From NCBI GenBank assembly GCA_002269645.1, contig NIVC01001508.1, forward strand, positions 62,001 to 126,000: a stretch of 64,000 nt of DNA, read 5' to 3'. Source of the DNA: Macrostomum lignano. Its lineage: Eukaryota. Every line of letters begins with the position of its first letter. The stretch's first letter is position 1. The position numbers and the translations under genes were made by a program. Below, in pieces: positions 1 through 18,925 of this stretch. The notes beneath the pieces were generated by a model. It saw only the letters and a list, made by a program, of their open reading frames with translations, searched no databases and was not told the DNA's origin.

Positions 1-1295
1 GCTGCATCTCACCTGATTCAACATCGCGCCATGGATGATCGAAACAGAGGGAATGTTGCTTCAATTCCCCCTAAAGAAAACAAGAAGCTTGAATTTGAAA
101 TCAAATGAGATTAAATTTGACAAAGTCAAAGCGATGTTGATGTTGCATTTTCTACGCTATGGTCATTCCTTTAACTCTATCTAATGTCCATTAATAACAA
201 GCAGTTAACAAGAATCTATTGTAGAATATCTAGATGGAAAAGCAATTAGATGGCTATTTTCTGCAACAGTCTCTGTACAGATGCGAGTTTGCTGTTTTTG
301 GAGCAACTCTGCTTGAACGGCAGATTTTCTCACGCACAAGTTGTATTTGCGCTCTCTCAGCCGGCACACTTTCACTTTGTCACGGCATTTTCTCGGTTTT
401 TTCTGTATGCCTCCTTCATTTTATTATGGTTAGATCTTTAGAAGCAGATCATTATTTGCTTCTGTTAAGCTCTCTCTTCTGCGGGTTAGCTTAGTTCTCA
501 GCGGGTTTCCGCTGGACCCCTGAGCACGGGCAGAGTCAGAGTCATAGCCTTGAATCTCACGTCAAGCCCCCCCCCCAATTGTCAGTTAACTCAATTAATG
601 CAGTCTCGCAGGGAATAGAACCCCGGGGTACCACTGAGTTCGGAGCTCTGAAAGTGTTTTGTCCTTTGAAATTTTGACTGCCTGAAGCGTGTGTTCAATG
701 TACGAGCGTATCTGTATCCAGAAGGTATATTAGCTTATACTAATGGCAAATCCTTTCTGCCATTATCCAAGCCCCGAGTCTCTCGCAGTTTTGTTGGCCT
801 GCAACTGGCGTGTAAATTATTGATTGCCCATTGGGAAGAGGGAAAGAGAGGGGACTGAGAGGGACCTCAAGTCAGTTGCTGATAAGCTACCCCTATAGGA
901 TTATATCCCCTGACTAGTTTAGCTTGGTTGGCCATTGCTAAAGTCTGCTTCAGCAAGCTTAGTGACTGTTTCTTGAGCTCCCGCGCTGTGCCTTTCTCCG
1001 CTTTCCTCACTCTGCATTGACTGTTTTCAGTTACAGAACTCGATCTCTTTAGCGGGGTTTTTGCCACTATATCAACCGACGTCTCTTCCTACACATGAGA
1101 GTTGGGAATTCAATTTTCCTACGCAAATTATCTGACAAGTAGACCTTGCTCAGAGTGTAGAACTGAGTGTAGTGCTGGGAACTGGCTTTTTCTGCATGTA
1201 CTGGGGTGGGTTCGGTGCCTGATAGTTCCGGATGTTTAGAGGAAAAAGAAAAACTAAGAAAATTAAGAGAAGGCAAGGAAGGAGAAGAGGGCAGT

Positions 1296-2315
1296 CTGAA
1301 AAGGAGATGAGAGATGAAAGGGAGATAGAAGATGAGAGGTAAATGATAGATGATAGGGAGATGAGGAATAATTTTGAGATGAGAGATGAGAAGGAGATAA
1401 GAGATGAGGGAGAGAGATGAGAGATAAGTTAGAGATAAAATATAAGAGGGAGATGAGAGACGAGAGGGAGATGAGGGATGAGAGGGAGTTAAGAGATACG
1501 AGGGAGATAAGAGATGAGAAGGAAATGAGGGATGAGAGATAAAGGGAGTTAAGAGATACGAGGGAGATAAGAGATGAGAAGGAAATGAGAGATGAGAGAT
1601 AAAGGGAGTTAAGAGATGAGAGGGAGATAAGAGATGAGAAGGAAATGAGAGATGAGAGATAAAGGGAGTTAAGAGATGAGAGGGAGATGAGAGATGAGAA
1701 GGAAATGAGAGATGAGAGATAATGGGAGTTAAGAGATGAGAGGGAGATAAGAGATGAGAAGGAAATGAGAGATGAGAGATAAAGGGAGTTAAGAGATGAA
1801 AGGGAGATAAGAGATGAGAAGGAAATGAGAGATGAGAGATAAAGGGAGTTAAGAGATGAGAGGGAGATGAGAGATGAGAAGGAAATGAGAGATGAGAGAT
1901 AAAGGGAGTTAAGAGATGAGAGGGAGATAAGAGATGAGAAGGAAATGAGAGATGAGAGATAAAGGGAGTTAAGAGATGAAAGGGAGATAAGAGATGAGAA
2001 GGAAATGAGAGATGAGAGATAAAGGGAGTTAAGAGATGAAAGGGAGATAAGAGATGAGAAGGAAATGAGAGATGAGAGATAAAGGGAGTTAAGAGATGAG
2101 AGGAAGATAAGAGATGAGAAGGAAATGAGAGATGAGAGATAAAGGGAGTTAAGAGATGAGAGGGAGATAAGAGATGAGAAGGAAATGAGAGATGAGAGAT
2201 AAAGGGAGTTAAGAGATGAAAGGGAGATAAGAGATGAGAAGGAAATGAGAGATGAGAGATAAAGGGAGTTAAGAGATGAGAGGGAGATGAGAGATGAGAA
2301 GGAAATGAGAGAAAA
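1296..2315 (+). repeat. 60-bp purine-rich tandem repeat
   Basis: Unit AGGGAGATAAGAGATGAGAAGGAAATGAGAGATGAGAGATAAAGGGAGTTAAGAGATGAG, in phase with the 60-nt line length. Confidence 0.95.
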
Positions 2316-2642
2316 GATACAGAAATGAAATATGGGGAAAAAGAGTTGTTAAAAGAAAATGAGAGCATTGATGATCGCGGTAAAGTGGACCATGTACTGT
2401 ATCCAATGCAGAAATGCAATAAATTTCCCTTGAAAGTAATTGATGCAACTTTAGTTTAATCGTTTTTCTCATGACCACAGGCCATTTTTCTATGTACCTA
2501 ATTCTTAATCTGTTTGCGCAACCCGAATTCTTATTTTCATGCATAGTAAATACAAAAAACGCTAGCGCTACTACTGCTGATTTTCAAACAGTAGCTAAAT
2601 AGAATATTTTTATCCATTTTTTACCGCCACTTCCAACCGCAG

Positions 2643-5600
2643 CTGCTGCAGAAGAGCCGTCAGAACCGACTGGGCAGCCACGGTGACATCCAGGAGGTGC
2701 GCAAGCATCCGTTCTTTGCCACCATCGACTGGCAGCTCCTTGAGCAGCGCAAGATTGAGCCGCCGTTCAAACCGAAGCTGATGAGTCCGCTGTCTACTGA
2801 GTACATTGACTCTGAGTTCACGAGGGAACCAGTGCCGCGTGAGTGCCATTTTTCTAGTTTTGCGTGCCATTTTCTAGCTGAGTGCGACATTTACTGGTTA
2901 GGTGTGCCATTTCCTTATTTGGGTGTGCCATTTCCATATTTGGGTGTGCCATTTCCATATTTGGGTGTGCCATTTCCATATTTGGGTGTGCCATTTCCAT
3001 ATTTGGGTGTGCCTTTTCCATATTTGGGTGTGGCATTTCCATATTTGGGTGTGCCTTTTCCATATTTGGGTGTGCCTTTTCCTTATTTGGGTGTGCCTTT
3101 TCCATATTTGGGTGTGCCTTTTCCATATTTGGGTGTGCCATTTCCATATTTGGGTGTGCCTTTTCCATATTTGGGTGTGCCTTTTCCATATTTGGGTGTG
3201 CCATTTCCCTGTTTGGGTGTGGCATTTCCCTGTTTGGGTTGCCATTTCCCTGTTTGGGTGTGCCATTTCCCTGTTTGGGTGTGGCATTTCCCTGTTTGGG
3301 TTGCCATTTCCCTGTTTGGGTAGCCATTTCCCTGTTTGGGTGTGCCATTTCCCTGTTTGGGTTGCCATTTCCCTGTTTGGGTGTGGCATTTCCCTGTTTG
3401 GGTGTGGCATTTCCCTGTTTGGGTTGCCATTTCCCTGTTTGGGTAGCCATTTCCCTGTTTGGGTGTGCCATTTCCCTGTTTGGGTTGCCATTTCCCTGTT
3501 TGGGTGTGGCATTTCCCTGTTTGGGTGTGGCATTTCCCTGTTTGGGTGTGCCATTTCCCTGTTTGGGTGTGCCATTTCCCTGTTTGGGTGTGGCATTTCC
3601 CTGTTTGGGTGTGGCATTTCCCTGTTTGGGTGTGGCATTTCCCTGTTTGGGTGTGCCATTTCCCTGTTTGGGTGTGCCATTTCCCTGTTTGGGTGTGGCA
3701 TTTCCCTGTTTGGGTGTGCCTTTTCCATATTTGGGTGTGCCTTTTCCATATTTGGGTGTGCCTTTTCCTTATTTGGGTGTGCCATTTCCTTATTTGGGTG
3801 TGCCTTTTCCATATTTGGGTGTGCCTTTTCCATATTTGGGTGTGCCTTTTCCATATTTGGGTGTGCCTTTTCCATATTTGGGTGTGCCATTTCCCTGTTT
3901 GGGTGTGGCATTTCCCTGTTTGGGTTGCCATTTCCCTGTTTGGGTGTGGCATTTCCCTGTTTGGGTGTGGCATTTCCCTGTTTGGGTGTGGCATTTCCCT
4001 GTTTGGGTGTGCCATTTCCCTGTTTGGGTTGCCATTTCCCTGTTTGGGTGTGCCATTTCCCTGTTTGGGTGTGGCATTTCCCTGTTTGGGTGTGGCATTT
4101 CCCTGTTTGGGTGTGCCATTTCCCTGTTTGGGTGTGGCATTTCCCTGTTTGGGTGTGGCATTTCCCTGTTTGGATTGCCATTTCCCTGTTTGGGTGTGGC
4201 ATTTCCCTGTTTGGGTGTGGCATTTCCCTGTTTGGGTGTGGCATTTCCCTGTTTGGGTGTGCCATTTCCCTGTTTGGGTGTGGCATTTCCCTGTTTGGTG
4301 TGGCATTTCCCTGTTTGGGTGTGGCATTTCCCTGTTTGGGTGTGGCATTTCCCTGTTTGGGTGTGGCATTTCCCTGTTTGGGTGTGGCATTTCCCTGTTT
4401 GGGTGTGGCATTTCCTAGTTGGGTGTGGCATTTCCCTGTTTGGGTGTGGCATTTCCCTGTTTGGGTGTGGCATTTCCTAGTTGGGTGTGGCATTTCCCTG
4501 TTTGGGTGTGGCATTTCCCTGTTTGGGTAGCCATTTCCCTGTTTGGGTGTGGCATTTCCCTGTTTGGGTAGCCATTTCCCTGTTTGGGTATGGCATTTCC
4601 TAGTTGGGTGTGCCATTTCCCTGTTTGGGTGTGGCATTTCCCTGTTTGGGTGTGGCATTTCCCTGTTTGGGTGTGCCATTTCCCTGTTTGGGTGTGGCAT
4701 TTCCCTGTTTGGGTGTGGCATTTCCCTGTTTGGATTGCCATTTCCCTGTTTGGGTGTGGCATTTCCCTGTTTGGGTGTGGCATTTCCCTGTTTGGGTGTG
4801 GCATTTCCCTGTTTGGGTGTGGCATTTCCCTGTTTGGGTGTGCCATTTCCCTGTTTGGGTGTGGCATTTCTTTGTTTGGTGTGGCATTTCCCTGTTTGGG
4901 TGTGGCATTTCCCTGTTTGGGTGTGGCATTTCCCTGTTTGGGTGTGGCATTTCCCTGTTTGGGTGTGGCATTTCCCTGTTTGGGTGTGGCATTTCCTAGT
5001 TGGGTGTGGCATTTCCCTGTTTGGGTGTGGCATTTCCCTGTTTGGGTGTGGCATTTCCTAGTTGGGTGTGGCATTTCCCTGTTTGGGTTGCCATTTCCCT
5101 GTTTGGGTGTGGCATTTCCCTGTTTGGGTGTGGCATTTCCCTGTTTGGGTGTGGCATTTCCCTGTTTGGGTGTGGCATTTCCTAGTTGGGTGTGGCATTT
5201 CCCTGTTTGGGTGTGGCATTTCCCTGTTTGGGTAGCCATTTCCCTGTTTGGGTGTGGCATTTCCCTGTTTGGGTAGCCATTTCCCTGTTTGGGTGTGGCA
5301 TTTCCTAGTTGGGTGTGCCATTTCCCTGTTTGGGTGTGCCATTTCCCTGTTTGGGTGTGGCATTTCCCTGTTTGGGTGTGGCATTTCCCTGTTTGGGTGT
5401 GGCATTTCCCTGTTTGGGTGTGCCATTTCCCTGTTTGGGTATGGCATTTCCCTGTTTGGGTGTGGCATTTCCCTGTTTGGATTGCCATTTCCCTGTTTGG
5501 GTGTGGCATTTCCCTGTTTGGGTGTGGCATTTCCTAGTTGGGTGTGCCGTTATATTTCTAAAGAGTTATGTCATTTTTCAATAGTTGACTGTGCCATTTC

Positions 5601-5775
5601 TAGTTGCCAAACTTAACTGTACTCTTCAGTCTGCTTCCTTCCATTTTCCCCAGAATCTGTCGGACGCTCCATCAAAATCAGCGCCAGCGTTCAGGAGGCC
5701 GACAACGACTTCATGGGATTCTCCTACGTGCCGCCGACCTTTGTTGATTCCGCTGGCTTGGGCACCGACCTGTGA
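2643..5775 (+). CDS. SGK: Serum/glucocorticoid-regulated kinase (AGC family), last two exons: 2643-2838 and 5654-5775; upstream exons not found in window
   Basis: Spliced translation [46 protein letters not shown]...[11 protein letters not shown]|[28 protein letters not shown]... The donor is GT 2839 and the acceptor AG 5652-5653, with phase 1 on both sides. It has an AGC C-terminal tail with hydrophobic motif FMGFSY, and the EPVP.S.G.S...ASV.EA...F.GFSY.PP pattern is typical of SGK. Confidence 0.85.
2858..5548 (+). repeat. 21-bp minisatellite filling the last SGK intron
   Basis: Unit TTTCCCTGTTTGGGTGTGGCA with 19/20-bp variants; it generates all the overlapping repeat ORFs here. Confidence 0.97.
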
Positions 5776-7530: not shown

Positions 7531-7879
7531 CTGGGAAGGGAGACAGCAGCCAAGACGCTACAAATTTAGCCGGGAAACTTGGCTGGAAAAGTGGCCTGTA
7601 CAAAGGTTCAAGGATTTGAGGTACGGAAGGAAGCGTGGAAAGGCGGAGAGGCTGCAAGGAAGAATGCGTGGCTAAGGATGAAGCAAGCGGCAGGCATTTC
7701 GAAAGAGGCCCTTCGAGTGAAACGCATCCTTTGTGCATCGCTGTATCGAAATCAGCAGCGCACCCACAGTTAAGCCTTGGGGAGGGGGGGGGTTGAAATT
7801 CGGGGACTGATGGAGGCAGGCCAAGGAGACCTGCAAACGAATATCTGGTTTCAGTCTGCGCACTGGAAAAAATAGGCGG

Positions 7880-8795
7880 ACTGGATATTTTAGCGCCGCT
7901 GGGCTGGATATTTTAGCGCCGGTGGACTAGATATTTTAGCGCCGGTGGACTAGATATTTTAGCGCCGGTGGACTTGATATTTTAGCGCCGGTGGGCTGGA
8001 TATTTTAGCGCCGCTGGGCTAGATATTTTAGCGCCGGTGGACTAGATATTTTAGCGCCGGTGGACTAGATATTTTAGCGCCGGTGGACTAGATATTTTAG
8101 CGCCGGTGGACTAGATATTTTAGCGCCGGTGGACTAGATATTTTAGCGCCGGTGGACTAGATATTTTAGCGCCGGTGGACTAGATATTTTAGCGCCGGTG
8201 GGCTGGATATTTTAGCGCCAGTGGACTAGATATTTTAGCGCCGGTGGGCTGGGTGGTTTAGCGCCGGTGGACTAGATATTTTAGCGCCGGTGGGCTGGGT
8301 GGTTTAGCGCCGGTGGACTAGATATTTTAGCGCCGGTGGACTAGATATTTTAGCGCCGGTGGACTAGATATTTTAGCGCCGGTGGACTAGATATTTTAGC
8401 GCCGGTGGACTAGATATTTTAGCGCCAGTGGACTAGATATTTTAGCGCCAATGGACTAGATATTTTAGCGCCGGTGGGCTGGGTGGTTTAGCGCCGGTGG
8501 ACTAGATATTTTAGCGCCAGTGGACTAGATATTTTAGCGCCAGTGGACTAGATATTTTAGCGCCGGTGGGCTAGATATTTTAGCGCCAGTGGACTAGATA
8601 TTTTAGCGCCGGTGGGCTGGGTGGTTTAGCGCCGGTGGACTAGATATTTTAGCGCCGGTGGACTAGATATTTTAGCGCCGGTGGGCTGGATATTTTAGCG
8701 CCGGTGGGCTGGATGGTTTAGCGCCGGTGGGCTGGATGGTTTAGCGCCAGTGGACTAGATATTTTAGCGCCGGTGGACTGGATGGTTTAGCGCCA
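7880..8795 (+). repeat. 23-bp minisatellite
   Basis: Unit GATATTTTAGCGCCGGTGGACTA. Confidence 0.95.
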
Positions 8796-9235
8796 ATATT
8801 CGGCTAAACAGAAGTGATAGCTTCGGTAGAAAGTGAGGTCCTGCATGCACCTACCAGATTTGTGTCCATGGCCTCCTTGGATGCTCCGTTGAAGGAAGAA
8901 AACAAAGAAGCCTTGACCGTCCAGTGCGATCTTATTGCTTTTTTAGATTCAGCATCCCTAGCTAGGCTACAAGGACTTCTAAAACTGGCATATTGTACAA
9001 CTTGCTTCCCAGTCCAGATTCCTAACGTAGTTAGGAAAAGTGGAATCAGTGTACACCCTCTCGCACGAAGAGCGTTCGGTCAGTGCCAAGGGTGGGAATG
9101 ACCCGGAGGGGGGATATTTGAAGCTGAAACCACTCGGGGAAAGCAACTTATTCTGTTTTTTGCGTCAGAAGACTAAAAGAAGGTATAGCTTTGTGCAACA
9201 AAGTTGCAGATCGTGCTTCTTAGAGACAAATTAAA

Positions 9236-12200
9236 ATGGCGTCAGCTCAGGTAACAACTAATCTAATTGATTGATTCTAATTAATCTACGAAGATTAAAT
9301 TTCGACAGAATGACGATTTTGTCAATTCACATTTTTCAATCTAGGATGAGGGCATGGATTTCCACAAGGCCTTCCTGTCGATCGATACGGACCACTCTGG
9401 CGAAATCACAGTTGATGAGCTGCAAAGGTGAGGCTGCATGGGTTCTTCTGGGTAACCTTTGAACCAAGTAGCTGCAAGTTGCAGGGCGTGCCAATGTCTA
9501 ACAAGTGCTATCGTGTCTAACAGGTGCTATCGTGTCTAACAGTTGCTATCGTGTCTAACAGGTGCTATCGTGTCTAACAGGTGCTATCGTGTCTAACAAG
9601 TTCTATCATGTCTAACGGGTGCTATCATGTCTAACAAGTGCTATCGTGTCTAACAGATGCTATCGTGTCTAACAGGTGCTATCGTGTCTAACAGTTGCTA
9701 TCGTGTCTAACAGTTGCTATCGTGTCTACCAGTTGCTATCGTGTCTAACAAGTTCTATCGTGTCTAACAGGTGCTATCCTGTCTAACAGGTGCTATCGTG
9801 TCTAACAGGTGCTATCCTGTCTAACAGGTGCTATCGTGTCTAACAGGTGCTATCGTGTCTAACAAGTTCTATCATGTCTAACGGGTGCTATCATGTCTAA
9901 CAAGTGCTATCGTGTCTAACAGATGCTATCGTGTCTAACAGGTGCTATCGTGTCTAACAGGTGCTATCGTGTCTAACAGTTGCTATCGTGTCTACCAGTT
10001 GCTATCGTGTCTAACAGGTGCTATCCTGTCTAACAGGTGCTATCGTGTCTAACAGGTGCTATCCTGTCTAACAGGTGCTATCGTGTCTAACAGGTGCTAT
10101 CGTGTCTAACAAGTTCTATCATGTCTAACGGGTGCTATCATGTCTAACAAGTGCTATCGTGTCTAACAGTTGCTATTAAGTCTAACAGATGACACCATCA
10201 TGTCTAACAGGATAACATCATCATGTCTAACAGGTAACACCATCATGTCTAACAGGTAACACCATCATGTCTAACAGGGAACACCATCATGTCTAACAGG
10301 GAACACCATCATGTCTAACAGGATAACATCATCATGTCTAACAGGTGACACCACCATGTCTAACAGGTAACACCATCATGTCTAACAGGTAACACCATCA
10401 TGTCTAACATCCCCCTACCGCAGCTACTGCCGCAAGATGAACTACCAAGAGACGTTCGTGCAGAAGTGGCTGATGCTGTTCGACGCTGATCAGAACGGCC
10501 GCATCACCTACGACGAATACTGCAACGCGCTGGGCCTCCCGCCTAAGAAGGACGTCATTGCCAAGCACAAGTCGCAGCAGAGCAAAGGCAAAAAGGTTAG
10601 GAAAAAACTTGATTTCACCTACTATGAGTAGCATTATGCAGAAATGTGTTTTTTTGCATTTTGCTTCAGTCTGGCAAGACGGCACGTGCGGTGAAAGTTG
10701 CGAAGAGACGTAAGGAGCAGGAAGAGACGCGGGTCACTGTGGAGACTGTGAAGCCGCCTGTGCAAGAGGAGGTCGTGCAGGTAAAATTAACAATTTTTTT
10801 TACATAACCACTTATGAGACAATTTAGTGGTGGGTTGAGAGTTGCGACATGAACAGATTAGACAGGTAGGATGGGGTGAGGCATTTAGTTGAAGGGGTGA
10901 GACAGGGAGATAAAGGGATTCGACAGAGAGATGAAGGGGTGAGACATGTAGTTGAATGGGTGAGACAGGTATATGAATGGGTGAGACAGGTATATGAAGG
11001 GGTGAGACAGGTATATGAAGGGGTGAGACAGATAGATGAAGGGATGAGACCGGTAGATGAAGGGGTGAGACAGGGAGATGAAGGGGTGAGACAGATAGAT
11101 GAAGGGGTGAGACAGGTAGATGAAAGGGTGAGACAGGTAGATGAAAGGGTGAGACAGGTAGATGAAAGGGTGAGACAGGGAGATGAAGGAGTGAGACAGG
11201 TAGATGAAAGGGTGAGACAGGTAGATGAAGGGGTGAGACAGGTAGATGAAGGGGTGAGACAGGTAGATGAAGGGGTGAGACAGATAGATGAAGGGGTGAG
11301 ACAGGTAGATGAAGGGGTGAGACAGGTAGATGAAAGGGTGAGACAGGTAGATGAAGGATGGGACAGGTAGATAAAGGGTGAGACAGTTAGATAAAGGGGT
11401 GATGCAGGTAGATGAAGGGTGAGACAGGTAGAGAAGGGGCTGATACACATGACAAAGAAACACTAATTAACATTTTCCTGCAATTGAAAAGACAGCTGCA
11501 GTTGCCCCCGTAGCCGCCTCCAAGGCTGCTGCAGCCGGTCAGGCACCTCAGCCGCCGCCGTCGCAGGCCCCCAGTCGCCGCAGCCGTATCCGCAATGAGC
11601 AGCTGAGCTACAGCGGGGTGATGCTCCACAGTCGGGCTCGGGTGTTTCAACGCAAAGCCCTGTACAGGCTGGCCAAGAAGTCGGTGGCCAACAAGCTGGC
11701 CAGGAAGCTGAAGGGAGCGGCCAGCACCGCCGCTCAGAAGCGACCGGCCGCGGTTGAGAAGCCCATCGGCGGCGATAAGAATGGAGGGACTCGGCAGGTA
11801 GGCCGGAGGCGAGAAGAAATTTTCTACCATAGACTAATCTAGAAATTGCCCACACTCTAGACAAAGTGAGTAATTTCCCTTGCTAGAAAAAGTGAGAAAT
11901 TCCCCTTGCCCCTTGCTAGACAAAGTAAGAAATTCCCCTCTCTAGACAAAGTGAGAAATTCCCCTTGTCCCTTGCTAGACAAATTGAGAAATTCCCCTTG
12001 CCCCTTGCTAGACAAAGTAAGAAATTCCCCTCTCTAGACAAAGTGAGAAATTCCCCTTGTCCCTTGCTAGACAAATTGAGAAATTCCCCTTTTCCCTTGC
12101 TAGACAAATTGAGAAATTCCCCTTGTCCCTTGCTAGACAAATTGAGAAATTCCCCTTTTCCCTTGCTAGACAAATTGAGAAATTCCCCTTTTCCCTTGCT

Positions 12201-12928
12201 AGACAAATTGAGAAATTCCCCTTGTCCCTTGCTAGACAAAGTGAGAAATTCCCCTTGTCCCTTGCTAGACAAATTGAGAAATTCCCCTTGTCCCTTGCTA
12301 GACAAATTGAGAAATTCCCCTTGCCCCTTGCTAGACAAAGTAAGAAATTCCCCTTGCCCTTTGCTAGACAAAGTGAGAAATTCCCCTCTCTAGACAAAGT
12401 TAAAAACTCCAGTCTTAAGCAAAGTGTGAAATCCCCTCCCCCCCCCAGAAGACAAAAATCCCCTTCAATAACGGAGACAAATCTAGGCATTCCCCAATCC
12501 CCATTCAGGTGGCCAGCCGCCGCCAGCCCCGTAGTCTGCCCACCGAGCCTACCTCGAAGCCGCGCCGTCTTCGTCTAGTCAAGACCTTCGCGCGGCAGCG
12601 ACGTCGCCTCAGAGCCTCCATCCAGCCGGGCAGCGTGCTGATCCTGCTGGCTGGCCGGCACCGCGGCAAGCGGGTGGTGTTCCTGAAACAGCTGGCCAGC
12701 GGACTGCTGCTGGTCACGGGGCCATTCAAGGTCAACGGCTGCCCGCTGAGACGCGTCTGCCAGAGCTTCGTGATCGCCACCAGGACTCGGCTGGAGCTGG
12801 GAGACCTGCGGCTGCCGGAGCGGCTCAACGATGCCTATTTTAGAAGGTTGGTTCGTGGCGGTTGTCGCGCGATTCACAGCCCTGAGGGCCAGACCCCCCA
12901 AGGCACAGTGTACGTGCCTGATGATTAG
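9236..12928 (+). CDS. EF-hand pair fused to ribosomal protein eL6 (RPL6-like) domain; exons 9236-9250, 9345-9427, 10424-10595, 10670-10780, 11492-11797, 12509-12928 (about 368 aa)
   Basis: All five introns are GT..AG and preserve frame (phases 0,2,0,0,0). EF loops are DTDHSGEITVDE and DADQNGRITYDE. eL6 motifs are EKPIGGDKNGGTR, LRASIQPGSVLILLAGRHRGKRVVFLKQLASGLLLVTGPFKVNGCPLRR and LNDAYFRR. The conserved eL6 C-terminus was not found. A possible 33-nt in-frame intron lies at 12847-12879. Confidence 0.75.
9493..10409 (+). repeat. 19/22-bp minisatellite in EF-hand-eL6 intron 2
   Basis: Unit GTCTAACAGGTGCTATCGT shifting to CATGTCTAACAGGTAACACCAT. A related array in reverse orientation lies at 18775-18925. 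Confidence 0.95.
10870..11445 (+). repeat. 21-bp minisatellite in intron 4
   Basis: Unit GTGAGACAGGTAGATGAAGGG. Confidence 0.95.
11863..12400 (+). repeat. 33-bp minisatellite in intron 5
   Basis: Unit TTGCTAGACAAATTGAGAAATTCCCCTTGTCCC. Confidence 0.95.
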
Positions 12929-13404
12929 ACAGTCAGGACCTCTGTGCACCCTGAGTGAGCGGTGTCTGGGTGCTCAGGAGTAGGGATGGCAAATCCCGGC
13001 TGTTCTACGATCCCGGGATCCCGGACGAAGCAATGACCCAATCCCGGGATCCCGGACCCAATCCCGGGATTGACATTTTAAATATTTTTGCCGATAGAAA
13101 GCCAGAAAACCCGCTTTTTTAAACGTTTTTTTAAAAGTAATAACTTTTCTATTTGATTTTACTAACAAACCGAGAACACATTTCAAATGTGTAATACATT
13201 TCATATTTCTCGACTTGACAGCATTACCGAGTATCTATTATCTAATATATAATGGTTTCTTTTCTTGTTTTGTTATTTTCTACACTTGTAACTTACGAGA
13301 TCGTAATCGTAATACATGCATGCAAAATTATCTCCCAGTCATTTTTCAATGTTTTTATGTACATAACACAAACTGATTTGAGTCACCTTAGTCTGCATTC
13401 GTCT

Positions 13405-14130
13405 CTATCTTTGTTCTCTATCCAATTCTATCTTGACTTTCTATCCAATTCTATCTTGATTCTCTATCCAATTCTATCTTGATTCTCTATCCAATTCTAT
13501 CTTGATTCTCTATCCAATTCTATCTTGATTCTCTATCCAATTCTATCTTGATTCTCTATCCGATTCTATCTTGACTCACTATCCGATTCTATCTTGACTC
13601 ACTATCCGATTCTATCTTGACTCTCTATCCGATTCTATCTTGACTCTCTATCCGATTCTATCTTGACTCTCTATCCGATTCTATCTTGATTTTCTATCCA
13701 AATCTATCTTGATTCTCTATCCGATTCTATCTTGATTCTCTATCCGATTCTATCTTGATTCTCTATCCGATTCTATCTTGACTCTCTATCCGATTCTATC
13801 TTGACTCTCTATCCGATTCTATCTTGACTCTCTATCCGATTCTATCTTGACTCTCTATCCGATTCTATCTTGACTCTCTATCCGATTCTATCTTGACTCT
13901 CTATCCGATTCTATCTTGACTCTCTATCCGATTCTATCTTGATTTTCTATCCAAATCTATCTTGACTCACTATCCGATTCTATCTTGACTCACTATCCGA
14001 TTCTATCTTGACTCATTATCCGATTCTATCTTGACTCTCTATCCAATTCTATCTTGACTCACTATCCAATTCTATCTTGACTCACTATCTGATTCTATCT
14101 TGATTGTCAATGCAATTCTATCTTGGTTCT
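13405..14130 (+). repeat. 23-bp minisatellite
   Basis: Unit ATTCTATCTTGACTCTCTATCCG. Confidence 0.95.
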
Positions 14131-14946
14131 CTATAATTAATTTAATTTTTCATATTGTTGGCTGTATCCATGGTAGGCCATGTTGCCAGCCAAATTTAGC
14201 CAAAGGTAATTAGAGACGGGCTTTGAAGTGTCTTCCAGTGAAGCCACTCTTCTTTACTTTTTCCTTTTTCCTGCCAGACTCTTCCAATAGAGCTTTTTCT
14301 CAGACTTTGCGGGTTTGCAGCTCAGTCTGCAGCCGTAGACTCAACCTCACAGTTATTTTTAGCCCAAGGGTAGAGCAGCGACCTTCTGCGCTAGCGACGT
14401 CACTCACCATGGATTGCTAGAACAGAAAATTCTGGATTGAGGAAACTGATCAATTCCTAAAATTTTAGTCTTAAAAATCTTCATTCAAAGTCTTGTAATT
14501 AGTTAGTTTTCAATAAAAAGGCTTTAAAGAGGCAGAGCGGCCCCATAGGGCTGTAATCTCGTGGCTTATTTCTCTGGGAGTTTTCCTCCCCAGATGGCTG
14601 TCCCCCTCGAACTCCCTGGTCCCGCGCAGCCGCCTCTCCAATCTCATTCTCTGTCTCTCTCCCTCCCGTTCTCTGCCAGCCCGCACCCTTTTCAGTTCAA
14701 CGCCCACAAAAAGAATACTCAGCTGGCATAAGCTGGGGGCGCGCGAACGCTATTGTGTAGTTTGCTTGGTTGCTAAGCAACCGTGAGAGCGCACACATTG
14801 GCGCACAGCTATAGTTATAGAGAGAGAGAGAGAGACAGACTGCTCATAAGAGCTTGCGATCCACTGCGACATCAGAGCAGAGAGCAGAGCTTACCTAGAA
14901 ACAGTGCGACTTAGCGGACTCAACCTAAAAATTAAATCTTGATTAT

Positions 14947-17900
14947 ATGGCTGGCCGAGTCAACCCCGCATTCATGCAGCAGCAGCAGCAGCAGCCGGAG
15001 AACTGGATGCCGAAACCCAGCGGCGGCAGCGACTGCCCACCCGGGCTCGAGTACCTGACCCAGCTCGACCAGGTGCTGGTCAAGCAGAAGAAGGAGTTCT
15101 TTGAAAGTGAGTAGGCATTAACCTGCATTAGTCTGGCGCCACCGAGCATTAATAAATCATGCAAAACGCAATACCTGTCATTCCCCTCTATTTGCAGTGG
15201 TGACTGGCTGGGAAACGAAGAACAAGTACGTGGTGAAGAACTCCATGGGCCAGCAGATCTACTATGCTAAGGAGCGTAAGTGTTCAAGCCAACCTTTTTT
15301 TGTTGTTGCCAGGGCTTTAGCTAGACCTCAGCTCTGACTCACCCGAGAATTTGATCCAGGTTGACCCAAGCACTCGACCTAGGTTGACCCAAGCACTCGA
15401 TCCAGGTTGACCCAAGCACTCGACCCAAGTTGACCCAAGCACTCGATCCAGGTTGACCCAAGCACTCGACCCAGGTTGACCTAAGCACTCGATCCAGGTT
15501 GACCCAAGCACTCGACCCAGGTTGACCCAAGCACTCGATCCAGGTTGACCTAAGCACTCGATCCAGGTTGACCCAAGCACTCGATCCAGGTTGACCTAAG
15601 CACTCGATCCAGGTTGACCCAAGCACTCGACCCAGGTTGACCCAAGCACTCGACCCAGGTTGACCCAAGCACTCGACCCAGGTTGATCCAAGCACTCGAT
15701 CCAGGTTGACCCAAGCACTCGATCCAGGTTGACCCAAGCACTCGACCCAAGTTGACCCAAGTACTCGACCCAGGTTGACCCAAGCACTCGACCCAGGTTG
15801 ACCCAAGCACTCGATCCAGGTTGACCCAAGCACTCGACCCAGGTTGACCCAAGCACTCGACCCAGGTTGACCCAAGCACTCGATCCAGGTTGACCCAAGC
15901 ACTCGACCCAAGTTAAACCAAGCACTCGACCCAGGTTGACCCAAGCACTCGACCCAGGTTGAGCCAAGCACTCGACCCAGCTTGACCGAAGCACTCGACC
16001 CAGGTTGACCCAAGCACTCGATCCAGGTTGACCCAAGCACTCGACCCAAGTTAAACCAAGCACTCGACCCAGGTTGACCCAAGCACTCGACCAAGTTGAC
16101 CCAAGCGCTCCACCAAAGTTAACTAAGCGTGGCTCCCCACCGCGCCGCAGACTCTGACAATTGCCAGCGCCAGTGCTGCGGCAACCAGCGCGCATTCGAG
16201 ATGACAGTGGAGGACAACACGGGCCAGGAGGTGATCCACATCAGCCGGCCCTACAAGTGCATGTGCTACGGCCAGTGCTTCTCCTGCTCGAAGTGTTGTT
16301 TCGACACGGTCACCGTGGAGGCCCCGCCCGGCCGCGTGGCCGGCAAGGTGAAGCAGATCTACGGCTGCTGCGAGGCCAAGTACAAAATCGAGGACAAAGA
16401 TGGCGACACCGTGCTGTACATTGACGGACCGAGCTACTGCAAGTGCTACTGCCCCGGGGATGACATCCCGTTCAAGGTGAGTCAGGGTGATTCGTTCGGG
16501 CTCATGGGTCAGAATTCTGGTTGGTGGGTCAGGATTTTAATTGTTGGGTCAGGATTCTAATTGGTGGGTCGGGATTCTAATCGGTGGGTCAGGATTCAAA
16601 TTGGTGGGTCAGGATTCTAATTAGTGGGTCAGGATTCTAATTGGTTGGTCAGGAGTCTAATTGGTGGGTCAGGAGTATAATTGGTGGGTCAGGAGTATAA
16701 TTGGTGGGTCAGGATTCTAATCGGTGGGGCAGGATTCAAATTAGTGGCTCAGGATTCTAATCGGTGGGGCAGGATTCAAATTAGTGGCTCAGGATTCTAA
16801 TAGGTGGCTCAGGATTCAAATTAGTGGCTCAGGATTCTAATCGGTGGGTCAAGATTCAAATTAGTGGGTCAGGATTCTAATTGGTTGGTCAGGAGTCTAA
16901 TTGGTGGGTGAGGAGTCTAATTGGTGGGTCAGGATTCTAATCGGTGGGTCAGGATTCAAATTGGTGGGTCAGGAGTCTAATTGGTGGGTCAGGATTCAAA
17001 TTGGTGGGTCAGGATTCTAATTGGTTGGTCAGGAGTCTAATTGGTGGGTGAGGAGTCTAATTGGTGGGTCAGGATTCTAATCGGTGGGTCAGGATTCAAA
17101 TTGGTGGGTCAGGAGTCTAATTGGTGGGTCAGGATTCAAATTGGTGGGTCAGGATTCAAATTGGTGGGTCAGGATTCAAATTGGTGGGTCAGGAGTCTAA
17201 TTGGTGGGTCAGGATTCTAATCGGTGGGTCAGGATTCAAATTGGTGGGTCAGGATTCTGGTTTGTGGGTCAGGATTATAGCTCGTGTGCCGGTGCATGGT
17301 AGGTGAAGACTAGAGCAGGTGGGTCAATCAATGATAAGTTATAATATTAAACAGGCAATAAAACTTACTCGCATCTCAAACAGCTGGTGACAAAGGACAG
17401 GGAGCACGAGATCGGTCGCGTGTCCAAGCAGTGGTCCAACCTGCTGCAGGAGTACTTCACGGATGCGGACAACTTCGGTATCACATTCCCAAAGGATCTG
17501 CACCTGGATGCCAAGGCCACCATCATCGGAGCCTGCTTCCTGATTGTGAGTCTGAGCTTTGAGAGTGCAAAATGCCTTAGCGATATTTAAAGTGATTAAG
17601 TTTCTTTTAGCACCAAATTTCCAATTTCTCAACTTCCTGACTTCTCATGTTAAAATGAAGCAATTGCGTGTTTTCTCCGGGGTGCTGCACGCACAAGTTT
17701 GTTGTGAGAATGTTGGAAAAAGTATTTCTGGAGAGCAACAATGCTTGGGTCAACGTGGGTCGAGTGCTTGAGTCAACTTGGGTCGAGTGCTTGGGTAAAC
17801 TTGGGTCGAGTGCTTCGGTCAACCTGGGTCGAGTGCTTAGGTCAACTTGGGTCGAGTGCTTGGGTTAACCTGGGTCGAGTGCTTGGCTCAACCTGGGTCG

Positions 17901-18339
17901 AGTGCTTGGGTCAACCTGGGTCGAGTGCTTGGCTCAACCTGGGTCGAGTGCTTCGGTCAAGCTGGGTCGAGTTCATGGGTCAACCTGGGTCGAGTGCTTG
18001 GGTCAACCTGGGTCGAGTGCTTGGGTCAACCTGGGTCGAGTGCTTGGGTCAATCTGGGTCGAGTGCTTGAATCAACTTGGGTCGAGTGCTTGGGTCAACT
18101 TGGGTCGAGTGCTTGGGTCAACTTGGGTCGAGTGCTTGAATCAACTTGGGTCGAGTGCTTGCGTCAACTTGGGTCGAGTGCTTGGGTCAAGCTGGGTCGA
18201 GTGCTTGGGACAACCTGGGTCGAGTGCTTGAGTCAACCTTTAGTGTACGATAACTGACAGCTACAACAACTCGCCGTTCACACCCATTGCCCAGGACTTC
18301 ATGTTCTTCGAGCGGTCGGGCAACAACAGGCGGCACTGA
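14947..18339 (+). CDS. PLSCR: Phospholipid scramblase (PLSCR family); exons 14947-15106, 15198-15275, 16151-16476, 17384-17545, 18295-18339
   Basis: Motifs CPPGLEYLTQLDQVLVKQ, GWETKNKYVVKNSMGQQIYYAKE, RQCCGNQRAFEM, IGRVSKQWSNLLQEYFTDADNFGITFPKDLHLDAKATIIGACFLI|DFMFFE. Splice sites are canonical and phases are consistent. Confidence 0.92.
15350..16110 (+). repeat. 23-bp minisatellite in scramblase intron 2
   Basis: Unit CGACCCAGGTTGACCCAAGCACT. Confidence 0.95.
16505..17275 (+). repeat. 20-bp minisatellite in scramblase intron 3
   Basis: Unit TTGGTGGGTCAGGATTCTAA. Confidence 0.95.
17745..18240 (-). repeat. 23-bp minisatellite in scramblase intron 4, inverted relative to intron 2
   Basis: Unit AGTGCTTGGGTCAACCTGGGTCG is the exact reverse complement of the intron 2 unit. 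Confidence 0.95.
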
Positions 18340-18774
18340 TTCCTTGAGCAACTGAAATTTGACTGCTCAAAACACCTTACACCTAATTCTTTAAAGCTCA
18401 GATTTGTCTTATTGAACTGTCCTATTTATCAGCAATGCACTGTTATAATTGTTATTTTTTCGACTTTTTGCGGAAATAAAAAGAAGCGGCTACAAAAATT
18501 TTTCGAGCAAATCGAACTTTTTTATTGGCTTTTTCAGTGTTCAGCTGATTGGTTTTTTCCTAACTACCAGCGTAATTTTTTAGTTCGATAATTTCACTGA
18601 AAGCTGCAGACCCTGAATTTTGTGAATGTGTTTATAATTATAACAACAATATGAATACTTAATAGTAGTAGTAGTAATAACAATAATAACTTTAATAATA
18701 ACCTCATGAGGCTGAGGGCACCCCGGCGCAACGCCATCTCGGCTACGGCGTCACCCTGAGGTCGTCACCCTGCT

Positions 18775-18925
18775 AGACATGCTGTTGTCTCCCTGTTAGA
18801 CATGCTGTTGTCACCCTGTTAGACATGCTGTTGTCACCCTGTTAGACATGCTGTTGTCACCCTGTTAGACATGCTGTTGTCACCCTGTTAGACATGCTGT
18901 CACCCTGTTAGACATGCTGTCTAAC
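18775..18925 (+). repeat. 22-bp minisatellite
   Basis: Unit of the form TGTTAGACATGCTGTTGTCACCC. Confidence 0.85.

What the first reader, a model, noticed from the sequence alone, without database searches (positions are those of the whole stretch)
9236..12928. Apparent EF-hand-ribosomal protein eL6 fusion: a candidate Ca2+-sensing ribosomal protein paralog
Seen: six exons splice in one frame through GT-AG introns to give MASAQ-DEGMDFHKAFLSI-DTDHSGEITVDE...WLMLF-DADQNGRITYDE-YCNALG, then a Lys/Ala-rich linker, then a clear eL6 core. Both EF loops are canonical (D1, D3, S/N5, G6, E12). The eL6 part has no upstream start of its own apart from an internal Met that would truncate it. Known: this EF-hand pair resembles the N-terminus of flatworm tegument-allergen-like proteins (Sm22.6 family), where it is normally followed by a dynein-light-chain-like domain, and canonical eL6 has no EF-hands. 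Inference: exon shuffling placed a Ca2+ sensor on a surface-exposed 60S protein paralog. This could produce a specialised, calcium-responsive ribosome or a repurposed RNA-binding protein. I know of no description of this architecture.
Basis: partly seen in the sequence, partly recalled or inferred. Interest (0 to 1): 0.9.

Follow-up and report, generated by a model that had tools for sequence, protein, structure and literature searches.

The report
Flatworm ribosomal protein eL6 with EF-hands
This is a copy, missing its last exon, of the Macrostomum lignano gene for ribosomal protein eL6, which in flatworms from free-living worms to schistosomes and tapeworms is encoded in one reading frame with a conserved calcium-binding-type EF-hand pair at its front end, an architecture I found described in no paper.

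Summary
Six GT-AG exons (9236-12846) join in one frame to give an EF-hand pair, a basic linker and eL6.

The window is Macrostomum lignano. An intact second copy (BOX15_Mlig004334g1, 419 aa, 98% identical) has a seventh exon. In the window, unrelated DNA replaces that exon, so the stop at 12928 is intron read-through and this copy is 3'-truncated.

The fusion is not a local oddity or a paralog:
- Intronless transcript contigs from at least six other sources carry the same fused reading frame.
- Trematodes and cestodes encode 970-1560 aa versions with a giant linker.
- No eL6 without EF-hands turned up for M. lignano.

The EF-hand module is the best-conserved part of the protein (64-93% identity; dN/dS 0.02-0.12). 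Its closest relatives are the EF-hand pairs of flatworm tegument-allergen-like (EF-hand plus dynein-light-chain) proteins. The Ca2+ loops are canonical in free-living forms and degenerate in parasites.

The most likely reading is that flatworm eL6 carries a tethered EF-hand module on the solvent side of the 60S subunit. An EF-hand-less isoform remains possible, because the spliced leader ends in ATG and four of the five internal acceptors are phase 0. I found no literature on this architecture.

The parts
9236..9250 (+). Exon 1: ATG plus 4 codons (MASAQ); donor GT at 9251.
   Evidence: 100% identical to exon 1 of the intact copy L001. Orthologues in other species start at the Met of MDFHKAF in exon 2.
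9345..9427 (+). Exon 2: first EF-hand (loop DTDHSGEITVDE at 9384-9419).
10424..10595 (+). Exon 3: second EF-hand (loop DADQNGRITYDE at 10482-10517), the conserved YCxxLGLxPK tail, and the start of the basic linker.
10670..10780 (+). Exon 4: Lys/Arg/Glu-rich linker. The acceptor is phase 0.
   Evidence: The linker is poorly conserved between species (12-46% identity).
11492..11797 (+). Exon 5: Ala/Pro-rich linker plus the eL6 N-terminal domain (RNEQLSYSGVMLHSRARVFQRKALYR ... IGGDKNGGTRQ). The acceptor is phase 0.
   Evidence: (Ribosomal_L6e_N, weak, 17.8 bits).
12509..12846 (+). Exon 6: eL6 core (GRHRGKRVVFLKQLASGLLLVTGP ... NDAYFR); donor GT at 12847.
   Evidence: The exon boundary was fixed by comparison with L001.
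12847..12928 (+). Read-through of the intron 6 donor to a TAG stop (tail LVRGGCRAIHSPEGQTPQGTVYVPDD). This is not coding in the intact copy.
12869..13370 (.). About 500 nt unrelated to the intact locus. It stands where the rest of intron 6, the last coding exon (77 aa plus stop) and about 150 nt of 3' UTR should be.
   Evidence: homology with L001 stops at window 12868 and resumes at 13371. One search finds no match to P0001 residues 343-419 anywhere in the window.
9494..10409 (.). Tandem arrays of 19-22 nt units filling intron 2.
10860..11447 (.).
11876..12387 (.). Tandem array of a 33 nt unit filling intron 5.

Best explanation
The locus is a copy of the Macrostomum lignano RPL6 (eL6) gene.

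In flatworms this gene encodes, in one reading frame, three parts:
- a TAL-type EF-hand pair of about 70 aa;
- a disordered basic or Ala/Pro-rich linker, about 35-80 aa in the free-living forms aligned here (M. lignano the longest) and 700-1400 aa in trematodes and cestodes;
- the full eL6 protein.

**Shown:**
- The fused reading frame exists in the genome.
- It exists on spliced transcript contigs of several species.
- It is ancient, being shared by Macrostomorpha and Neodermata.
- The EF-hand part is under purifying selection at least as strong as that on the eL6 core.

**Inferred:** No eL6 gene without EF-hands is seen, so this fused protein is probably the eL6 that enters the 60S subunit. 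The N-terminal stretch of eL6 lies at expansion segment ES7L on the solvent (back) side of the large subunit and is the most variable part of the protein. The EF-hand pair would therefore hang from the ribosome surface on a flexible tether. It would act as a docking or regulatory module, Ca2+-dependent in free-living species (both loops canonical) and probably Ca2+-independent in parasites (loop 2 has lost the position-12 acidic residue).

**This copy:** The window copy has lost its last coding exon. It is most likely a defective duplicate or allele, or an assembly variant. The intact copy lies on NIVC01001054.1.
For: - **Identity and splice structure:** (P0001 at 98% identity, Pfam EF-hand plus Ribosomal_L6e; all six exons map to L001 at 98.5-100%).
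- **Transcript support:** the fused reading frame is contiguous on 1.1-1.4 kb contigs with UTRs from independent runs. These are SRR28338163-6, SRR30276804/12, SRR14039982, ERR1719229 and JGI 3300073458/38.
- **Phylum-wide spread:** proteins with an N-terminal EF-hand pair and a C-terminal Ribosomal_L6e domain occur in Schistosoma haematobium, S. curassoni, S. turkestanicum, Calicophoron daubneyi, Opisthorchis felineus, O. viverrini, Mesocestoides corti, Sparganum proliferum and Schistocephalus solidus.
- **Selection:** the EF-hand region is 64-93% identical between species, against 50-80% for the eL6 core and 12-46% for the linker. dN/dS for the EF-hand region is 0.02-0.12 where dS can be estimated.
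- **No second eL6:** the only M. lignano entries among the eL6 hits all carry the EF-hand part. Annelid, mollusc, brachiopod and vertebrate eL6 have no EF-hand.
- **No internal termination signal:** no AATAAA or ATTAAA occurs on the + strand between 9300 and 14511.
- **Structural plausibility:** eL6 sits on the back of the large subunit and its N-terminal stretch is the least conserved part (PMC10281867). The AlphaFold model gives a confident EF-hand pair (pLDDT about 80, residues 10-70) followed by low-confidence linker.
Against: - There is no direct evidence that the EF-hand part is present in assembled ribosomes or that it binds Ca2+.
- The M. lignano spliced leader ends in ATG (PMC8629364). 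The acceptors at 9345, 10670, 11492 and 12509 are all phase 0. A trans-spliced mRNA without EF-hands would therefore be in frame.
- Some helminth gene models split the locus. M. corti has VDD77472.1 plus VDD77471.1. S. solidus has models of 1074 aa and 180 aa. E. granulosus has a 370 aa model without EF-hands.
- M. lignano RNA-seq itself could not be examined here.
- The window copy is truncated, so it may not be expressed or functional. Its 8 nonsynonymous against 5 synonymous differences from L001 are uninformative.
Confidence: 0.68

Rival explanations
1. One locus, two products. The ribosomal eL6 is translated from an mRNA that lacks the EF-hand exons. That mRNA would arise by spliced-leader trans-splicing onto an internal phase-0 acceptor, with the leader's own ATG as the start codon, or from an internal promoter. 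The full fused protein would then be a separate, possibly extraribosomal, Ca2+-binding isoform.
For: - The M. lignano spliced leader ends in ...TTGCATG, and about 30% of its genes are trans-spliced (PMC8629364).
- The acceptors at 10670 and 11492 are phase 0, so SL-ATG would read MSGKTAR... or MTAAVAP... in frame.
- Split or EF-hand-less gene models exist in cestodes.
Against: - Every transcript contig recovered carries the fused frame, and none of the assembled eL6 sequences from those lineages lacks the EF-hand.
- The linker stays open for 700-1400 codons in parasites, which requires translation through it.
- Short-read assemblies can hide a 35-nt leader branch, so this rival is weakened but not excluded.
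Confidence: 0.2
2. A cleaved fusion partner, as in the ubiquitin-ribosomal protein fusions. The EF-hand pair is made with eL6 but removed by proteolysis before or during 60S assembly, and then serves as a solubility or chaperone aid or as a free Ca2+-binding protein.
For: The precedent of Ub-eL40, Ub-eS31 and FUBI-eS30 (established knowledge). The linker is long and disordered, so it would be accessible to proteases.
Against: No conserved motif sits at the domain boundary. The only conserved segment after the second EF-hand (LGLxPKxEVV) is shared with TAL-like proteins, so it belongs to the domain. The linker is otherwise unconserved in sequence and length.
Confidence: 0.08
3. A lineage-specific paralog was created by recent exon shuffling, and a canonical RPL6 elsewhere in the genome supplies the ribosome.
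For: M. lignano is a hidden polyploid with many duplicated genes (PMC10468722 abstract). At least two copies of this locus exist: the window and L001.
Against: - Both copies are fused.
- No M. lignano eL6 without EF-hands appears among the hits scoring at least 167 bits.
- The fused architecture is shared with Neodermata.
- Intron positions differ from those of the TAL-like gene.
Confidence: 0.04
4. An annotation or read-through artefact. Two adjacent genes, an EF-hand gene and eL6 (for example an operon), only appear to join.
For: Intron 4 is 711 nt, but only about 120 nt once the tandem repeat is subtracted. That is similar to the repeat-adjusted operon spacers described for M. lignano.
Against: - The same is true of the other introns here.
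- The frame is kept across all junctions.
- The fused frame is contiguous on transcripts of other species and conserved across the phylum.
- There is no poly(A) signal between the parts.
Confidence: 0.03

Closest known systems
Canonical eL6 / RPL6 (Pfam Ribosomal_L6e PF01159 plus Ribosomal_L6e_N PF03868) of other animals
   Same: The core is the same: GRHRGKRVVFLKQLxSGLLLVTGP, the NGxPLRR motif, and in the intact copy the C-terminal helices ending in PHxMxF. There are 29 invariant columns shared with lamprey, Lingula and zebrafish eL6. A variable N-terminal stretch precedes the helix that contacts ES7L (PMC10281867).
   Different: A folded EF-hand pair plus an extra linker precedes the eL6 N-terminal domain. 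In Neodermata the linker is 700-1400 aa and the L6e_N region has diverged. The window copy lacks the C-terminal 77 aa.
Flatworm tegument-allergen-like (TAL) / CaBP family: Sm22.6, CsTegu20.8 (PDB 5x2e), FhCaBP4 (PDB 9voa)
   Same: The EF-hand pair is of this type. Shared signatures lie outside the Ca2+ loops (NYKExFVxKWLxLFD and YCxTLGLxPK). These proteins are the best single-domain PDB and database matches. The closest is M. lignano BOX15_Mlig005207g1 at 121 bits.
   Different: There is no dynein-light-chain-like domain, and eL6 follows instead. Intron positions in the EF-hand region differ.
Ubiquitin or ubiquitin-like fusions to ribosomal proteins (UBA52/eL40, RPS27A/eS31, FAU/eS30)
   Same: A conserved, folded, non-ribosomal domain is encoded in frame at the N-terminus of a ribosomal protein, and this is the normal form of the gene.
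   Different: Ubiquitin is cleaved at a conserved Gly-Gly and the fusion is pan-eukaryotic. Here there is no conserved cleavage motif, a long linker, and a distribution limited to flatworms as far as sampled.

Membership tests
eL6 (Ribosomal_L6e) | Match to Pfam PF01159 above the gathering score. | tested here: met
   The window product scores 40.5 bits (cut-off 21.4) but covers only profile positions 1-42 of 111. The intact copy P0001 scores 100.9 bits over 1-111.
eL6 (Ribosomal_L6e) | Invariant core residues shared with canonical animal eL6. | tested here: met
   29 invariant columns in the alignment with lamprey, Lingula and zebrafish eL6.
eL6 (Ribosomal_L6e) | Complete C-terminal helices (...PHxMxF). 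| tested here: not met
   Absent from the window. Present in the intact M. lignano copy and in all orthologues.
eL6 (Ribosomal_L6e) | Incorporation into the 60S subunit. | not testable with these tools
   Needs ribosome purification with mass spectrometry, or cryo-EM.
EF-hand pair | Two helix-loop-helix motifs with canonical 12-residue loops (D1, D/N3, D/S/N5, G6, E12). | tested here: met
   Pfam EF-hand_7 at 46.9 bits and EF-hand_1 with two stretches. The loops are DTDHSGEITVDE and DADQNGRITYDE. The predicted fold has pLDDT about 80.
EF-hand pair | Ca2+ binding. | not testable with these tools
   Needs ITC or 45Ca assays on the recombinant domain. The loops are degenerate in neodermatan orthologues, where loop 2 position 12 is T, Q or N.
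Tegument-allergen-like (TAL) proteins | An N-terminal EF-hand pair of the TAL type. | tested here: met
Tegument-allergen-like (TAL) proteins | A C-terminal dynein-light-chain-like domain (PF01221). The family is defined this way in PMC3317908 and PMC4300400. | tested here: not met
   There is no Dynein_light hit in the window product or in P0001. It is therefore not a TAL family member; only the EF-hand module is homologous.
Cleaved ribosomal-protein fusions (ubiquitin type) | A conserved processing site at the junction. | tested here: not met
   No conserved motif lies between the EF-hand tail and eL6, and the linker is 12-46% identical and variable in length.

The most novel reading that the evidence does not exclude
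All rhabditophoran flatworm ribosomes carry on eL6 a tethered TAL-type EF-hand module, with a giant disordered arm in parasites. This would make the flatworm 60S subunit a constitutively 'decorated' ribosome. Its localisation or activity would respond to Ca2+ in free-living species, and the module would have been re-purposed as a Ca2+-independent docking arm in parasites.
Probability: 0.3. Interest if true: 0.8.

Novelty: new variant of a known kind. Interest (0 to 1): 0.66.

Why it matters
- **Ribosome biology.** Ribosomal proteins are among the most architecture-stable proteins known. A folded signalling-type domain fused to one and kept under strong purifying selection across a whole phylum is rare outside the ubiquitin fusions. 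If the module is on the ribosome, it offers a natural, genetically tractable case of a lineage-specific ribosome appendage, since M. lignano has transgenesis and RNAi.
- **Parasitology.** In schistosomes, liver flukes and tapeworms the same gene encodes a 1000-1500 aa eL6 with a parasite-specific arm. That is relevant to parasite-selective targeting and to antigenicity, because TAL-type EF-hands are IgE targets.
- **Annotation.** Helminth gene models that split this locus into an 'EF-hand protein' and a short 'eL6' are probably wrong.

Tried and rejected
- **Last exon elsewhere in the window.** A tblastn search with the intact protein and with human RPL6 found nothing.
- **Nature of the replacing 500 nt.** There is no copy elsewhere in the window or in L001, and no terminal inverted repeats or target duplications. 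Its origin is unresolved.
- **Shared intron positions with the M. lignano TAL-like gene, as evidence of exon shuffling.** None are shared. The TAL-like gene splits at FVE|KW and the eL6 gene at ELQ-S|YC.
- **EF-hand profile search through the word-indexed database.** It returned only two fragments. The exhaustive HMMER search was needed, and its list is dominated by long multi-EF-hand proteins that had to be filtered by single N-terminal stretch.
- **AlphaFold model.** It is confident only for the EF-hand pair (mean pLDDT 55), so I ran no fold search.
- **dN/dS between the two M. lignano copies.** Only 13 differences exist, which is uninformative.
- **Look-up of the spliced window product in transcript assemblies.** The tool turned it away.
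- **Exact look-ups of hypothetical SL-ATG isoforms.** I did not run these, because M. lignano RNA-seq assemblies appear not to be in the collection and a negative result would mean nothing.
- **Literature searches.** Searches for the architecture, the gene id and the SRA runs found nothing relevant.
- **Taxon of the transcript sources.** The taxa behind the Logan and JGI transcript contigs could not be determined.
Full report
**1. What is in the window**

I read 8800-13400 and rebuilt the gene model. The exons are 9236-9250, 9345-9427, 10424-10595, 10670-10780, 11492-11797 and 12509-12846. All introns are GT...AG and the exons join in one frame.

The product begins MASAQDEGMDFHKAF. It has two canonical EF-hand loops: DTDHSGEITVDE at 9384-9419 and DADQNGRITYDE at 10482-10517. 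A Lys/Arg/Glu-rich and then Ala/Pro-rich linker follows. After it come the eL6 N-terminal domain and the eL6 core, up to ...NDAYFR.

Pfam confirms both parts: EF-hand_7 at 46.9 bits, EF-hand_1 at 45.4 bits and Ribosomal_L6e at 40.5 bits.

Introns 2, 4 and 5 are short introns inflated by tandem arrays of 19-33 nt units. That explains their size.

**2. Source, and a defect in this copy**

The spliced product is 98% identical to Macrostomum lignano BOX15_Mlig004334g1 (P0001, 419 aa). A WormBase-type model of M. lignano (P0002) matches window segments at 100%, including 5713-5772. The window is therefore M. lignano.

I fetched the P0001 locus as L001 (NIVC01001054.1). It is colinear with the window at 90-95% over flanks and introns, and at 98.5-100% in the six exons.

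L001 has a seventh exon (L001 13737-13971) after a 70-nt intron. That exon encodes the last 77 aa, TKKQSKQ...GQRPHDMVF.

Homology between the window and L001 stops 22 nt after the exon 6 donor, at window 12868. It resumes at window 13371. The roughly 500 nt between are unrelated to L001. No match to P0001 residues 343-419 exists anywhere in the 64 kb.

This copy lacks about 60% of the Pfam L6e domain (1-42 of 111 here, against 1-111 at 100.9 bits in P0001). It is a truncated duplicate or allele, or an assembly variant. I could not tell which.

**3. Is the fusion real?**

Yes. The decisive evidence comes from outside the window.

- **Transcripts of other species.** One search returned proteins of 346-369 aa (P0005-P0011) that cover 98% of the query (P0010 aligns over 53%) at 43-57% identity and carry both domain types. 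Their coding DNA lies uninterrupted on 1.1-1.4 kb contigs with 5' and 3' UTRs. These contigs were assembled independently from several sequencing runs: SRR28338163-6, SRR30276804/12, SRR14039982, ERR1719229 and two JGI samples. Such contigs are mRNAs. A further fragment (P0121) runs from the EF-hand into the eL6 N-domain.
- **Parasitic flatworms.** An exhaustive HMMER search with a profile of the EF-hand part found proteins of 800-1562 aa with a single N-terminal match. Pfam shows a C-terminal Ribosomal_L6e domain in these. They come from Schistosoma haematobium (XP_012792262.1, 1286 aa), S. curassoni, S. turkestanicum, Calicophoron daubneyi, Opisthorchis felineus, O. viverrini, Mesocestoides corti, Sparganum proliferum and Schistocephalus solidus.

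The architecture is thus shared by Macrostomorpha and Neodermata, the deepest split within rhabditophoran flatworms. Annelid, mollusc, brachiopod, nemertean and vertebrate eL6 in the same searches have no EF-hand.

**4. Paralog or the eL6 gene itself?**

Among hits of at least 167 bits, the only M. lignano entries are P0001-P0004, and all four contain the EF-hand part. A canonical M. lignano eL6 should have scored in that range, and none did. Together with the phylum-wide distribution, this indicates that the fused gene is the flatworm orthologue of RPL6 and not a specialised paralog.

**5. Selection**

I made codon alignments of six fused genes.

| Region | Amino-acid identity between species |
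|---|---|
| EF-hand region | 64-93% |
| eL6 core | 50-80% |
| eL6 N-domain and C-terminal region | 30-70% |
| Linker | 12-46% |

Where dS can be estimated, dN/dS for the EF-hand region is 0.02-0.12. The module is therefore translated and functionally constrained as part of this gene.

**6. Origin of the module**

The best single-stretch matches among solved structures are Clonorchis tegumental protein 20.8 kDa (5x2e) and CaBP4 (9voa). These score 49-63 bits in one stretch, against about 20-36 bits per stretch for the calmodulin and calcium-dependent protein kinase alignments shown.

The best non-fused database relatives are proteins of 177-223 aa with an EF-hand pair plus Dynein_light. This is the TAL/CaBP architecture. 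The top one is M. lignano BOX15_Mlig005207g1.

The alignment shows shared signatures outside the Ca2+ loops: NYKExFVxKWLxLFD and YCxTLGLxPK.

The protein is nonetheless not a TAL family member, because the defining dynein-light-chain-like domain is absent. Intron positions in the EF-hand region differ between the two M. lignano genes, so nothing points to a recent exon shuffle.

**7. Calcium**

Free-living forms keep canonical loops. Neodermatan orthologues do not.

- Their loop 1 reads, for example, DTEKRGVITIED or DRNNTGKITMED.
- Their loop 2 has T, Q or N at position 12.
- The helices and the hydrophobic signatures are nevertheless retained.

The conserved role is therefore more likely a protein-docking or structural one, which may be Ca2+-gated in free-living worms.

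**8. Mechanism proposed**

eL6 lies on the back of the large subunit. Its N-terminal stretch, the least conserved part of the protein, contacts ES7L (PMC10281867).

An N-terminal EF-hand pair on a disordered tether would be solvent-exposed and compatible with assembly. The model gives pLDDT about 80 for residues 10-70 and low confidence for the linker.

I therefore propose that flatworm 60S subunits display this module. That step is inference; nothing here shows the protein in ribosomes.

**9. Main rival**

The M. lignano spliced leader ends in ATG (PMC8629364). Four of the five internal acceptors are phase 0, so trans-splicing at 10670 or 11492 would give an in-frame eL6 without EF-hands. Several ab initio helminth models also split the locus or start inside the linker.

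Three observations count against this being the main product:
- All recovered transcripts are fused.
- Linkers of 700-1400 codons stay open in parasites.
- No AATAAA or ATTAAA lies between the two parts.

I could not inspect M. lignano RNA-seq, so an isoform without EF-hands remains possible. I put it at about 0.2.

**10. Novelty**

The sequences are public and auto-annotated as 'Large ribosomal subunit protein eL6' or 'EF hand, partial'. Full-text searches for the architecture, the gene id and the Pfam name found no description.

It is a new variant of a known kind: a ribosomal protein with a conserved, lineage-specific, folded N-terminal domain. The ubiquitin fusions are the nearest precedent.

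Noticed in passing
window 12869-13370: About 500 nt with no counterpart in the intact locus replaces the last eL6 exon and 3' UTR. It contains short CCCGGGATCCCGG palindromic repeats. Its origin (transposon, rearrangement or misassembly) is unknown.
   Followed up: partly
window 1303-5546, 7878-8794, 13404-14134, 15356-18239: Very long tandem arrays of 20-60 nt units fill the intergenic and intronic DNA. One example is a 21-nt unit repeated about 128 times at 2894-5546. GC and AT skews are strong locally.
   Followed up: no
window ~14900-18900 (+) and ~1-5700 (+): By colinearity with L001, the neighbours are a scramblase gene downstream and a PX-domain protein kinase gene upstream. The fragment at 14929 gives a weak Pfam Scramblase hit.
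   Followed up: partly
L013 (NIVC01002030.1), P0156: Free-living M. lignano has EF-hand plus dynein-light-chain (TAL/CaBP-type) proteins. Papers, however, describe this architecture as restricted to parasitic flatworms or to trematodes (PMC4300400, PMC12347358).
   Followed up: partly
P0243, P0230, P0232, P0274 (neodermatan orthologues): Trematode and cestode eL6 proteins are 970-1560 aa. A 700-1400 aa low-complexity, Lys/Glu/Ser/Pro-rich linker separates the EF-hand pair from the eL6 core, and the L6e_N region has diverged. Several database models split the gene in two.
   Followed up: partly
window 9345, 10670, 11492, 12509: Four of the five internal splice acceptors are phase 0. The M. lignano spliced leader ends in ATG, so any of them could in principle yield an in-frame trans-spliced product.
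   Followed up: partly
L002-L011 5' ends: The fused eL6 mRNAs of related species mostly have 5' UTRs of about 60-160 nt (L008's contig begins only 17 nt before the ATG). They show no obvious spliced leader or terminal oligopyrimidine start, which is unusual for a ribosomal-protein mRNA. The contig ends may be incomplete.
   Followed up: no
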